DNA of 64,000 nt, taken from Fimbriosthenelais zetlandica. Its lineage: Eukaryota. The notes under the pieces are model-generated. The model saw only the letters and a program-made list of their open reading frames with translations, ran no database searches and was not told the DNA's origin. The stretch is from contig OZ365113.1 of assembly GCA_977030845.1 (NCBI GenBank), positions 29,512,001 through 29,576,000 on the forward strand, written 5' to 3'. Every line of letters starts with the position of its first letter. Positions within the stretch are counted from its first letter, which is position 1. Made by a program: the position numbers and the translations under genes. Positions 42,982 through 46,871 of the stretch are shown here, piece by piece.

Positions 42982-43336
42982 GAAGTACCTAGAGATAAAT
43001 GAGCCTAAATTGGAATTCGTCGGTAGATTCTCATGAAGAATTCATCGTATGTAAAAGAACCGAGGTTAGCTGTCTCAAAACCTGTAGGCCTAAACGGCGA
43101 GTGAATGGAAGCAGTGTTGTGAGCGATAGTAGCTAGGGGTAGCGCCGTAGCCCAGCTATACGGCAAGAAAAACGGGGTTAGGCCTTTGGTAGGCTTATTG
43201 TTAATGCTAGGCCTGGATCTCAATCATTGAAAACCACAGGCCCATTTTTATTTAGGGAATGGTGGATGATTTGAGGCTGCACTGGAGACGGATTACTTTT
43301 TGTTTGCAGAATAAGGCGCCAAAAGCAAAAAAGCAT

Positions 43337-43409
43337 TCTCCCAAAGGGGATTCGAAAACAGAACCCCTGGATTTGAAATCCAACACTCTACCATCTGAGC
43401 TATGACGGA
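43337..43409 (-). pseudogene. tRNA-like module type A (pseudo-anticodon UCA); further copies 44264-44336, 45096-45168, 46038-46104
   Basis: A-box TAGCTCAGATGGTAGAG; paired D arm and anticodon arm TTGGA-TTTCAAA-TCCAG; TTCGAAT loop; T6 terminator. T and acceptor stems do not pair. Confidence 0.7.
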
Positions 43410-43705
43410 TCACGTGTTGTATGTAATCCCACGTAGAGCTGGCTGGGTGGCGCCCATGACCCCTTCAATAGCTTTGAACTCCTGCTGCTGCTAGTGCACC
43501 TGCTGCTGCTACATCTGCGGCTGCTGCCGCTTATGCCATATAAATATAGGCTACCATTTTTCCAGAAATAAAGAATATTTACCAAAATCTAAAACTATGG
43601 AGCAGGAAAGTTAAAATTGATTAAATTGTGAGAAACAGCCCGAAAACCAGATTGTGCACTTGATAATTATTAGTTACAGACAAAGCGCTAAAAAGGAAAA
43701 AGCAT

Positions 43706-43778
43706 AGTGCAAAAGGGGATTTGATCCCAGGACCTTAGGGTTTGAAATCAAGCACTCTACCATATGAGCTAGCAAGGC
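43706..43778 (-). pseudogene. tRNA-like module type B (UCA loop, unpaired anticodon stem); second copy 45475-45547
   Basis: GCCTTGC TAGCTCATATGGTAGAGTG ... AGGTC CTGGG ATC(A/G)AAT CCCC, followed by T5. Confidence 0.6.
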
Positions 43779-43863
43779 TTATATACTGGAACCGTTTCCC
43801 TATACAAGCTAAACGTGGCGACCATTGTTAGTCAGCAAGAAAAAGCTTACAAAGAGAAAACAT

Positions 43864-43936
43864 AGATACAGAGGGGGTTCGATCCCAGGACCTTTGGCTT
43901 TCAAAGCCAAGAGCCTACCATCTGAGCTATCAAGGC
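43864..43936 (-). pseudogene. tRNA-like module type C (pseudo-anticodon UGA); copies 44711-44783, 45639-45711, partial about 46500-46533
   Basis: TAGCTCAGATGGTAGG; anticodon arm TTGGC-TTTGAAA-GCCAA; AGGTC variable loop; GGGATCGAACCC T-loop. Acceptor stem unpaired. Confidence 0.65.
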
Positions 43937-46871
43937 TTATATACTGGAACCGATTCCCTATACAAGCTAAAACTGGCTGAGTGGCGCCCATTGCCATCTG
44001 CTGCTTTGCCATCTGCTGCCATTCCATCTGCTTCTCCTCCATCTGCTGCCGCTGCATCTGCTTCCGAGGCTTCTGGTGGCGCTGCATCTGCTGCCGAGGC
44101 AAAACGTTTATTAAAATTATGGGGAATAAATAGTCGGAAAACCAGTTTTTGGACTTGATAATCATTAATAAAAATTCTTTAGGAAATGGTGGGTGATTTG
44201 AGGCTGCACTGGAGACGGATTACTTTTTGTTTGCAGAATAAGGCGCCAAAAGCAAAAAAGCATTCTCCCAAAGGGGATTCGAAAACAGAACCCCTGGATT
44301 TGAAATCCAACACTCTACCATCTGAGCTATGATGGATCACATGGACTAGGCTATCAACTACAACCAGTTCTGTTACCCCCGTTATTGCAGTCTGGCTGGC
44401 GAATGTGGCATCCGAGGATTAAGCGATGAAACCCCTCTCTGGTGCTGTCATCTGCCTTCTTTTAATTGAAATTGATTGTGGGGAGATTTTACTTCATGTC
44501 TCAAGCAGAAGGTGGCAGCCTTTTAGGTCATGGACCACCAAATGTTTCCCTCTTATTGTATAATTATGAAATATTTTGATCTTGTTAAAGTGTCACAAGC
44601 TAAATGTTTGGTGATCTCTCAAGAAGGGAAGCTAAAAAATGGGTTAAGTGATGAGGAACAGCCAGAAAAATCAGATTGTGCAGCAACAAAAAGCTTAAAA
44701 GAGAAAACATAGATCCAGAGGGGGTTCGATCCCAGGACCTTTGGCTTTCAAAGACAAGAGCCTACCATCTGAGCTATCAAGGCTTATTATAGTGGAACCG
44801 CTTCCCTATACAAGCTAAAACTGGCTGAGTGGCGCCCATTGCCATCTGCTGCCATTCCATCTGCTGCTCCTCCATCTGCTGCCGTTGCATCTGCTTCCGA
44901 GGCTTCTGGTGGCGCTGCATCTGCTGCCGAGGCAAAACTTTTATTAAATTATGGGGAATAAATAGTCGGAAAACCAGTTTTTGGACTTGATAATCATTAA
45001 TAAAAATTCTTTAGGGAATGGTGGATGATTTGAGGCTGCACTGGAGACGGATTACTTTTTGTTTGCAGAATAAGGCGCCAAAAGCAAAAAGGCATTCTCA
45101 GAAAGGGGATTCGAAAACAGAACCCCTGGATTTGAAATCCAACACTCTACCATCTGAGCTATGACGGATCACGTATTGTATGTAATCCCACGTAGAGCTG
45201 GCTGGGTGGCGCCCATGACCCCTTCAATAGCTTTGAACTCCTGCTGCTGCTAGTGCACCTGCTGCTGCTAAATCTGCGGCTGCTGCCGCTTATGCCATAT
45301 AAATATAGGCTAATATAGGCTACCATTTTTCCAGAAATAAAGAATATTTACCAAAATCTAAAACTATGGAGCAGGAAAGTTAAAATTGATTAAATTGTGA
45401 GAAACAGCCCGAAAACCAGATTGTGCACTTGATAATTATTAGTTACAGACAAAGCGCTAAAAAGGAAAAAGCATAGTGCAAAAGGGGATTCGATCCCAGG
45501 ACCTTAGGGTTTGAAATCAAGCACTCTACCATATGAGCTAGCAAGGCTTATATACTGGAACCGTTTCCCTATACAAGCTAAACGTGGCGCCCATTGTTAG
45601 TCAGCAACAAAAAGCTTACAAAGAGAAAACATAGATAGGCCTACAGAGGGGGTTCGATCCCAGGACCTTTGGCTTTCAAAGCCAAGAGCCTACCATCTGA
45701 GCTATCAAGGCTTATATACAGGAACCGATTCCCTATACAAGCTAAAACTGGCTGAGTGGCGCCCATTGCCATCTGCTGCTTTGCCATCTGCTGCCATTCC
45801 ATCTGCTGCTCCTCCATCTGCTGCCGCTGCATCTGCTTCCGAGGCTTCTGGTGGCGCTGCATCTGCTGCCGAGGCAAAACGTTTATTAAATTATGGGGAA
45901 TAAATAGTCGGAAAACCAGTTTTTGGACTTGATAATCATTAATAAAAATTCTTTAGGGAATGGTGGGTGATTTGAGGCTGCACTGGAGACGGATTACTTG
46001 TTGTTTGCAGAATAAGGCGCCAAAAGCGAAAAAGTAGTCTCCCAAAGGGGATTCGAAAACCCTGGATTTGAAATTCAACACTCTACCATCTGAGCTATGA
46101 TGGATGACATTGCCTAGGCTATAAACTACAACCAGTTCTGTTACCCCCGTTATTGCAGTCTGGCTGGCGAATGTGGCATCCGAGGATTAAGCGATGAAAC
46201 CCCTCTCTGGTGCTGTCATCTGCCTTCTTTTAATTGAAATTGATTGTGGGGAGATTTTACTTCATGTCTCAAGCAGAAGGTGGCAGCCTTTTAGGTCATG
46301 GACCACCAAATGTTTCCCTATTATTGTATATGAAATATTTTGATCTTGTTAAAGTGTCACAAGCTAAATGTTTGGAGATCTATCAAGAAGGGAAGCTAAA
46401 ATGCGTTAACTAACGTATGAGGAACAGCCAGAAAAACCGATTGTGCAGTTGATCAGTATTAGTTAGCAACAAATAGCCTAGCTAAAAAGTGAAAACATAG
46501 ATCCAAAGTGGGTTCGATCCCAGGACCTTTGGATTAGGCCTAAAATATTAGAAACTTAAAATGTTACAAGCCATGGAAGAAGTAAAATAGCAACGATAAA
46601 TCGTATATATAGCCTATAGGCCTACACAATAAAAGCCAATCTCTGACCTAGGCTAAGTCGCTTAAGTTGGGCCTAGGCCTAGTTTAGGCCTAGGCCTATA
46701 GCCTAGCCTACATATGCATATGTTCAGAGCTCTAACGTTTAGAGCGTTTAAGCGTTTAACAAGTACCGCTTTCTATCCTTCTCTTATCATGCAGAAAGAT
46801 TAGGCCTAAATGCATCAAAATGCTTTATCATGCCTCGCCATGTAGCGCCGCCGTCGGCGACACCCAAAACA

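What the first reader, a model, noticed from the sequence alone, without database searches (positions are those of the whole stretch)
43251..46535. 3.3-kb higher-order array of tRNA-like Pol III modules: a tRNA-derived satellite or non-canonical RNA cluster
Seen: two unit types alternate (U = A-X-B-C-CTG tract; V = A-Y-C-CTG tract), giving nine near-complete and one partial 73-nt tRNA-like modules, all on the minus strand. Each keeps the A-box and a T-loop/B-box-like motif, types A and B have an oligo-T terminator, and the acceptor and T stems are broken. Established: the AGATGGTA D-loop, TT-NNN-A loop and GGGATCGA (A54) T-loop are features of eukaryotic tRNA-Ala. Inference: an ancient tRNA-Ala-like tandem array that diverged into three module types and was then re-amplified as a 1.76-kb higher-order repeat. 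Retained promoter boxes without a cloverleaf suggest non-translational RNA, or a TFIIIC-bound boundary between DHX38 and the NRF-6-like gene.
Basis: partly seen in the sequence, partly recalled or inferred. Interest (0 to 1): 0.72.

Follow-up and report, generated by a model that had tools for sequence, protein, structure and literature searches.

The report
Dispersed satellite of decayed tRNA copies
The 3.3-kb array is real, but it is one of dozens of scattered arrays of a non-coding tandem-repeat family (about 150 repeat units genome-wide) whose units carry worn-out tRNA-derived modules, and nothing found here shows that it does a job at this spot.

Summary
Observation confirmed. Window 43248-46535 holds nine full and one partial tRNA-like modules, all on the minus strand, in a 1768-bp higher-order repeat present 1.86 times (twins 98% identical, 12 indels).

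None is a tRNA: Rfam scores are 17-23 bits (threshold 29), ARAGORN finds none, and they fold no better than shuffles. All nine keep an A box. Only the five B/C-type modules and the partial one keep a B box. The four A-type modules have a disrupted B box with an internal TTTT.

The array is not locus-specific. The same segments, in similar orders, recur at 94-100% identity at 45 or more places on 10 contigs (about 143 A heads and 155 B/C heads). Flanks are unique, array ends fall anywhere in the unit, there are no target-site duplications or shared termini, and the tree is star-like. The tRNA-like modules are no better conserved than the spacers.

Best reading: a euchromatic, satellite-like repeat family derived from a tandem tRNA array or SINE-like units. 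It grows locally by duplication and probably spreads as array fragments.

Transcription and TFIIIC binding could not be tested (no sequencing run was listed). The scan had already noted tRNA-tipped repeat families elsewhere in this genome. New member of a known kind; low interest.

The parts
43248..46535 (-). Whole tandem array: 1.86 copies of a 1768-bp higher-order repeat. It begins inside a B-type module and ends inside an X spacer.
46496..46535 (-). Partial B-type module (3' half only, with B box GGGATCGAACCC); upstream edge of the array
   Evidence: (family D4)
46039..46104 (-). A-type module 1: A box intact, B box degenerate, 6-nt shorter than its twin
   Evidence: Rfam tRNA 17.1 bits
45638..45711 (-). 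B-type module 1: A and B boxes intact, anticodon-stem hairpin kept; carries a 6-nt insertion at a TA near its 3' end
   Evidence: Rfam tRNA 21.4 bits
45475..45547 (-). C-type module 1: A box TAGCTCATATGG, B box GGGATCGAATCC, TTTT at its 3' end
45097..45168 (-). A-type module 2
   Evidence: Rfam tRNA 22.1 bits
44711..44783 (-). B-type module 2
44257..44336 (-). A-type module 3
   Evidence: Rfam tRNA 23.4 bits
43864..43936 (-). B-type module 3
43706..43778 (-). C-type module 2 (B box with G57A: GGGATCAAATCC)
43330..43409 (-). A-type module 4
   Evidence: Rfam tRNA 21.8 bits
44345..44699 (-). Y spacer (non-coding). Copies on other chromosomes are 94-99% identical.
46114..46470 (-). Y spacer, variant form: sister to a copy at C19:16.38 Mb rather than to its local twin
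43991..44100 (-). CAG-rich minisatellite at the end of spacer X (15/30-nt period); further copies at 44836-44934 and 45763-45871

Best explanation
The array is one local copy of a mid-repetitive, non-coding, satellite-like tandem-repeat family.

Its monomers are 0.84-0.93 kb long and are built from two or three diverged paralogues of an old unit of about 160-400 nt: a leader, a tRNA-derived module, a T-rich trailer and a tail. That old unit most likely came from a tandem tRNA gene array or a SINE-like element, with tRNA-Ala the best but unproven parent for the B and C types.

The tRNA parts have decayed. There is no cloverleaf, and the A type has even lost its B box.

Inferred steps:
- The family spread recently, in a burst, to dozens of euchromatic sites as array fragments cut at arbitrary phase. 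These were inserted without target-site duplication, most likely by reintegration of extrachromosomal circular or linear array DNA at breaks.
- At this site, 1 kb downstream of the DHX38/PRP16 stop codon and 0.7 kb upstream of the first ORF of the next gene, one further duplication of a 1.77-kb stretch followed, by unequal exchange or replication slippage.
- The B and C modules still carry A and B boxes and a T run. They could be transcribed by RNA polymerase III into RNAs of about 67-80 nt, or bind TFIIIC, as a by-product. No selection for this is visible.

Shown: anatomy, decay, dispersal, lack of termini and target-site duplications, local duplication, absence of extra conservation.
Inferred: the parent, the mode of spread, neutrality.
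For: Dispersal:
- B module plus leader: 179 first-look candidates, and the 40 scored include 94-99% identical copies on 7 contigs.
- Y spacer: 174 candidates at 94-99%.
- C module: 287 candidates at 95-100%.
- Whole-genome pattern counts: 155 B/C leader-head junctions and 143 A heads, reversed controls 0.

Same anatomy elsewhere: stretches of 1.8 kb match at 93-94% in the same segment order. Other arrays are (A-X-B-Y)n with a period of about 868 bp, or mixed orders.

No carrier element:
- Flanks of 12 loci are mutually unrelated.
- Array ends map to arbitrary positions in the monomer.
- There is no target-site duplication beyond chance at 8 arrays.
- There is no inverted repeat around the window array.
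- No ribozyme or other Rfam family appears at E <= 10.

Phylogeny: the tree is star-like with terminal branches of 0.01-0.02, and the window twins are sisters.

No constraint on the modules: conservation is 0.975 / 0.934 / 0.966 against 0.971 for spacers.

Not tRNAs.

Non-coding: only short ORFs, with no Pfam match.

Origin: the units are paralogous through leader, module and trailer. B-C spacing is 158-164 nt, against a period of about 160 nt for the real tRNA-Glu array in the window and 149-170 nt for tRNA-Ala arrays.

Literature frame: euchromatic satellite arrays that spread in bursts, with irregular junctions and presence in eccDNA, are described in Tribolium (PMC11610590).
Against: - No RNA, ChIP or read data could be obtained: no run was listed. 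Transcription, TFIIIC occupancy and function are therefore untested, not excluded.
- The conservation test compares young copies (3% divergence). It has little power to detect weak selection.
- Array edges were defined by similarity to this window's variants. Some 'ends' continue into more diverged family variants (seen at L004 and L023).
- The spread by extrachromosomal DNA is inferred only from negative evidence.
- In two other regions the family is interleaved with intact tRNA-Lys genes. This hints at a link with live tRNA clusters that I could not test statistically.
- One B copy and one A copy elsewhere still pass a tRNA detector.
Confidence: 0.7

Rival explanations
1. A tRNA-derived SINE that still spreads by retroposition. 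On this view the arrays are tandem SINE insertions, or multimeric Pol III transcripts copied back by a LINE reverse transcriptase.
For: - Each old unit has the SINE plan: a tRNA-like head with A and B boxes, a body, and a simple-repeat (CAG-rich) tail region.
- LINEs are active in this genome and one has inserted into a sister array.
- Other tRNA-headed SINE-like families were noted in this genome by the scan.
Against: - No solo copies were seen; every sampled locus holds multi-unit arrays.
- The 5' ends do not coincide with module starts, and the 3' ends do not coincide with T runs, A tails or the CAG tract.
- There are no target-site duplications at 8 arrays.
- Internal TTTT runs would stop Pol III long before a 0.9-kb monomer is transcribed.
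Confidence: 0.12
2. A functional Pol III-related element. Either the B and C modules are genes for tRNA-like small RNAs, or the clustered B boxes bind TFIIIC and act as a chromatin boundary between the DHX38 gene and the NRF-6-like gene.
For: - Six B boxes and nine A boxes lie within 3.3 kb, against about 1.3 B-box matches expected by chance in the whole 64-kb window.
- Box spacing is as in tRNAs and a T run follows.
- The position is intergenic, between two genes on the same strand.
- The family sits beside live tRNA genes at some loci.
Against: - The modules are not better conserved than the spacers, and the B module is the least conserved part.
- Four of the nine modules have lost the B box.
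- The same arrays sit in dozens of unrelated contexts, with arbitrary truncation and both orientations equally common.
- No structure beyond shuffled controls.
- No expression data exist.
Confidence: 0.1
3. Tandem repeats carried inside a larger mobile element (Helitron/Helentron, foldback or P-type, or MITE with central repeats). On this view the window array is the interior of such an element.
For: - Earlier scan notes describe tRNA-tipped foldback and tandem repeats and P-type footprints in this genome.
- One sister array ends in a short inverted piece of the family (L010 2894-3008).
Against: - Flanks of 12 loci share nothing.
- There is no inverted repeat of 30 nt or more around the window array apart from one 80% AT-rich chance pair.
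- Ends are at arbitrary phase and lack target-site duplications.
Confidence: 0.06
4. Assembly artefact: the second higher-order copy is a false duplication.
For: The copies are 98% identical, and no reads could be laid on the region.
Against: - The twins differ by 30 substitutions and 12 indels, including 18-, 10- and 6-nt ones.
- The same alternating order exists at other loci.
- One Y copy is of a different variant lineage.
Confidence: 0.02

Closest known systems
Euchromatic dispersed satellite DNAs (e.g. Cast1-9 and TCAST of Tribolium castaneum, the 1.688 family of Drosophila)
   Same: - Short tandem arrays scattered over all chromosomes in gene-rich DNA.
- High similarity between arrays on different chromosomes, which indicates a burst.
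- Irregular junctions with no common motif.
- No coding capacity.
- The proposed spread is by eccDNA or by transposable elements (PMC11610590).
   Different: - The monomer here is long and composite (0.84-0.93 kb, with 2-3 tRNA-derived modules and internal minisatellites).
- Copy number is low, about 150 monomers.
- No long heterochromatic home array was found.
- Presence in eccDNA was not tested.
tRNA-derived SINEs and SINE-derived tandem repeats
   Same: - A tRNA-related head with Pol III A and B boxes and a T-run terminator.
- A unit plan of head, body and simple-repeat tail.
- A decayed cloverleaf.
   Different: - No solo copies.
- No target-site duplications.
- No constant 3' end.
- The copies are multi-unit arrays cut at arbitrary phase.
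Tandem tRNA gene arrays with pseudogenes (as in this genome's own tRNA-Glu, tRNA-Ala and tRNA-Lys arrays)
   Same: - Head-to-tail tRNA-type units; the B-C pair has the same period of about 160 nt.
- The D arm and T loop are identical to the genome's tRNA-Ala(AGC).
- At two regions the family alternates with intact tRNA-Lys genes.
   Different: - No module in the window passes a tRNA detector.
- The leaders are unrelated to those of the sampled real tRNA-Ala genes.
- No listed family locus lies within 100 kb of a listed tRNA-Ala gene.
Ribozyme-bearing tandem repeats (retrozymes, newt satellite 2, Schistosoma Sm-alpha)
   Same: Dispersed tandem multimers with arbitrary ends, which would fit copying from a circular template.
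   Different: No hammerhead, twister, HDV-like or other self-cleaving motif was found at E <= 10. The monomer is much longer.

Membership tests
Functional tRNA gene | Cloverleaf that passes a tRNA detector (Rfam RF00005 at 29 bits or more; ARAGORN) | tested here: not met
   Scores are 17.1-23.4 bits and ARAGORN finds none in the array. The five tRNA-Glu genes of the same window score 64.3 bits.
Functional tRNA gene | Paired acceptor and T stems | tested here: not met
   Rfam alignments mark non-pairs in the acceptor and T stems. Folding is no better than shuffles, z from -0.9 to +0.5.
Pol III type-2 promoter unit | A box and B box at tRNA-like spacing, followed by a T run of at least 4 | tested here: met
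   Met for the five B/C modules. Not met for the four A modules, which have a disrupted B box and an internal TTTT. Activity itself is not testable here.
tRNA-derived SINE | Dispersed single copies flanked by target-site duplications | tested here: not met
   All sampled loci are multi-unit arrays. The longest flank repeats at 8 arrays are 0-5 nt, no better than shuffles.
tRNA-derived SINE | Constant 3' end (A-rich, simple-repeat or LINE-derived tail) with variable 5' truncation | tested here: not met
   Both ends fall at arbitrary monomer positions.
Satellite DNA (euchromatic, dispersed type) | Head-to-tail non-coding monomers forming arrays at many loci and chromosomes | tested here: met
Satellite DNA (euchromatic, dispersed type) | Presence in extrachromosomal circular DNA, or long homogeneous home arrays | not testable with these tools
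   No read data were listed. The largest array seen is about 9 kb, at C11:14.84 Mb.
Tandem repeats inside a DNA transposon (Helitron, foldback, MITE) | Conserved termini or inverted repeats bracketing the array | tested here: not met
   Flanks are unrelated at 12 loci. There is no inverted repeat around the window array.
Ribozyme satellite / retrozyme | Self-cleaving ribozyme in each monomer | tested here: not met
   No ribozyme family appears among the Rfam matches at E <= 10.
TFIIIC-bound boundary (ETC-like / tDNA insulator) | TFIIIC occupancy and barrier activity | not testable with these tools
   Only the B-box motifs can be counted: six in 3.3 kb.

The most novel reading that the evidence does not exclude
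The family is a self-propagating 'tDNA cassette'. On this reading its surviving A and B boxes recruit TFIIIC and Pol III, so that each newly seeded array creates a small Pol III / TFIIIC domain next to genes (here between DHX38 and the NRF-6-like gene). Such a domain would yield 67-80-nt tRNA-like RNAs or act as a boundary. The link with live tRNA-Lys arrays at other loci would then reflect a shared amplification mechanism of tRNA clusters in this genome.
Probability: 0.08. Interest if true: 0.55.

Novelty: new member of a known kind. Interest (0 to 1): 0.25.

Why it matters
The main value is for annotation.
- These modules should not be counted as tRNA genes.
- The array should not be read as a locus-specific regulatory invention.

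It adds an invertebrate (probably annelid) example of a composite, tRNA-derived satellite that spreads through gene-rich DNA as array fragments without transposon hallmarks. That could serve studies of how tandem repeats, possibly via extrachromosomal DNA, seed new sites.

If the B and C modules proved to bind TFIIIC, the family would be a natural experiment on mobile Pol III elements as chromatin organisers. Nothing here shows that.

Tried and rejected
- Sequencing runs for expression or long-read support: none was listed.
- Coding reading of the CAG/CTG tracts and of the longest ORFs (118, 61, 60, 59, 55 and 50 aa): no Pfam match above noise. Rejected.
- Empty-site search with the window's two flanks. 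The downstream flank contains an unrelated dispersed repeat of about 170 bp, 79 nt from the array edge, and the upstream flank is essentially unique. No paralogous empty site was found.
- Foldback structure: none in the window.
- Larger carrier element: rejected, because the flanks are unique.
- Parent tRNA. A pattern for an 'ATAGCTCAG..GGTAGAGC' tRNA found nothing. Alignment scores do not separate Ala from Lys. Left open.
- Look-up of earlier findings by sequence: blank.
- The large protein searches were not used. The organism's name was not needed for the verdict.
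Full report
**1. What is there**

Read on the minus strand, window 46535 to 43248 is a head-to-tail array.

- The 15-mer TAGCTCAKATGGTAG, which is the tRNA D arm and A box, occurs nine times in the 64-kb window. All nine lie inside the array and on the minus strand, against 0.02 expected by chance.
- Direct-repeat families show start-to-start spacings of 1764-1769 bp at 96-99% identity.
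- Aligned globally, the two higher-order copies are 98.0% identical with 30 substitutions and 12 indels of up to 18 nt.
- My decomposition is b(partial)-Y-A-X-B-C-Z-A-X-B-Y-A-X-B-C-Z-A-X(truncated). That gives four A-type, three B-type (plus one partial) and two C-type modules. Two sub-units alternate: A-X-B-C-Z (about 930 bp) and A-X-B-Y (about 840 bp).
- Spacers X and Z end in CAG-rich minisatellites of 15/30-nt period.

**2. The modules are tRNA-derived but are not tRNAs**

- Rfam's tRNA model gives 17.1-23.4 bits against a threshold of 29, with non-pairs in the acceptor and T stems.
- ARAGORN and Rfam at gathering threshold find only the five real tRNA-Glu(UUC) genes at 52.7-56.3 kb, which score 64.3 bits.
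- Single-strand folding of all nine modules is no better than dinucleotide shuffles, with z from -0.9 to +0.5.
- A B-box match (GGNWTCRANNCC) is present in the three B modules, the partial B and the two C modules, but in none of the four A modules.
- In the A type the canonical GGTTCGAATCC is split by seven extra bases that create an internal TTTT.
- If Pol III started at the usual place, transcripts would end after about 50-58 nt (A), 67 nt (C) or 80 nt (B).

**3. Parent tRNA**

- This genome has at least 103 matches to a tRNA-Ala(AGC) pattern.
- B and C modules align slightly better to this tRNA-Ala (scores 20-25) than to the genome's tRNA-Lys(UUU) (16-20). A modules align slightly better to Lys.
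- Ala is plausible for B and C but is not established.
- The leaders of the sampled real tRNA-Ala genes are unrelated to the module leaders.

**4. Deep structure**

- The A, B and C units are paralogous through a leader beginning GGCGCCAC, the module, and a T-rich trailer. After that they diverge.
- B and C share about 80% identity over about 208 nt.
- The B-to-C distance is 158-164 nt. That is the same as the period of the real tRNA-Glu arrays in this window (about 160 nt) and of tRNA-Ala arrays elsewhere (149-170 nt).
- This favours descent from a tandem tRNA array at the DNA level. A SINE-like ancestor (head, body, simple-repeat tail) is not excluded.

**5. The array is not a local invention**

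- A 131-nt B module with its leader finds 179 first-look candidates in the 447-Mb assembly. The 40 scored include 94-99% identical copies on seven contigs.
- The 356-nt Y spacer finds 174 candidates at 94-99%.
- The C module finds 287 candidates at 95-100%.
- Whole-genome pattern counts, allowing up to 2 mismatches, give 155 B/C leader-head junctions and 143 A heads. Both orientations are about equal, and reversed-pattern controls give 0.
- That amounts to roughly 150 monomers, about 0.03% of the genome, at 45 or more places on 10 contigs.
- Other loci carry the same segments in the same or permuted order. Examples are 1.8-kb matches at 93-94%, homogeneous (A-X-B-Y)n arrays of about 868-bp period, and Y-A-X-C-Z fragments.

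**6. How it spreads**

- The flanks of 12 loci share nothing with each other, apart from overlapping fetches and one local duplication.
- Array ends map to arbitrary positions of the monomer, in the window as well: the array starts inside a B module and ends inside X.
- At eight arrays the longest repeat shared by the two flanks is 0-5 nt, no better than shuffles.
- No inverted repeat brackets the window array.
- No ribozyme or other RNA family appears at E <= 10.
- Maximum-likelihood trees of 30 A-X-B, 20 Y and 10 C-Z copies are star-like, with terminal branches of 0.01-0.02.

Together these are the features described for euchromatic satellite DNAs that spread in bursts. For those, eccDNA reintegration, carriage by transposable elements and interlocus conversion are the discussed mechanisms (PMC11610590). 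Carriage by a transposable element is not supported here. I therefore favour insertion of extrachromosomal array fragments, but this rests on negative evidence only.

**7. Local history**

- In the trees the two C-Z copies of the window are sisters (support 99/97).
- The two A-X-B copies that lie 1769 bp apart are also sisters (88/78). One local duplication of the 1.77-kb stretch is therefore supported.
- The distal Y copy (46114-46470) instead groups at 100/98 with a copy at C19:16.38 Mb. Either the inserted fragment was already heterogeneous or conversion occurred.

**8. Function**

- Across the dispersed copies, the mean fraction matching the consensus is 0.975 (A module), 0.934 (B), 0.966 (C) and 0.971 (spacers). 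The B module ranks among the least conserved 73-nt windows, 15th of 414.
- There is thus no sign of constraint on the modules or their boxes. With only about 3% divergence, however, the test is weak.
- The ORFs are short and match no Pfam family.
- No public run could be listed, so transcription and array length could not be checked.

**9. Context**

- The upstream gene is DHX38/PRP16. Its exons match human PRP16 at E 2.5e-30 and 5.5e-23, and its last ORF stops at 42251.
- The next + strand gene starts at about 47256. One of its exons gives a weak Acyl_transf_3 match (E 0.009), consistent with an NRF-6-like protein.
- The array is intergenic. The same family lies in many unrelated contexts, so the locus-specific boundary reading loses its basis.

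**10. Verdict**

This is a real array, a new member of a known kind (a tRNA-derived, dispersed satellite-like repeat), with no demonstrated function.

The scan had already noted tRNA-tipped tandem and foldback repeat families elsewhere in this genome. I did not test whether those are the same family.

Noticed in passing
window 52738-53129 and 56106-56339 (-): Five intact tRNA-Glu(UUC) genes (Rfam 64.3 bits each) lie in two tandem clusters with a period of about 160 nt. They are 6-10 kb from the array, on the opposite strand to the NRF-6-like gene, and lie among its ORF-bearing exons.
   Followed up: partly
window 42997-43168: An unrelated dispersed repeat of about 170 bp (SINE/MITE-sized) lies 79 nt beyond the array's downstream edge. 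It has at least 500 first-look candidates in the genome at 81-94% identity.
   Followed up: no
window about 45643-45650 (-): B module 1 has six extra bases at a TA (TA became TAGGCCTA) that its twin at 43868 lacks. This is the same style as the six-letter 'scars' noted by the scan elsewhere in this genome.
   Followed up: partly
window 45312-45322 against 43553: A 10-nt tandem duplication (tagcctatat) distinguishes the two Z spacers. An 18-nt segment present at 46449-46466 is missing from the Y copy at 44683.
   Followed up: no
L029 5269-9250 (C11:14847268-14851249): A 3982-bp non-LTR retrotransposon is inserted in a Y spacer of a sister array, with 3 nt of the spacer repeated at both sides. 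It has ORFs of 522 aa (reverse-transcriptase-like) and 321 aa (endonuclease-like) on the minus strand. The ORF types were read by eye and not scanned.
   Followed up: partly
L027, L028 (C12, an 87-kb unplaced contig) and L030 (C11:55418000-55427999): A compound tandem repeat. A Y-A-X-C-Z fragment of this family alternates with a 0.86-2.5-kb segment that carries intact tRNA-Lys(UUU) genes on the opposite strand (8 genes by ARAGORN).
   Followed up: partly
L010 398-468 and L005 1549-1620: Two family copies elsewhere still pass a tRNA detector. An A-type copy scores 34.6 bits in Rfam. A B-type copy with GGGTTCGAACC instead of GGGATCGAACC is called tRNA-Ser(TGA) by ARAGORN.
   Followed up: partly
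window 46640-46720 and 47700-47990 (-): There are dense runs of AGGCCT-containing words (taggcctaggcct...), a short-motif-rich stretch between the array and the next gene.
   Followed up: no
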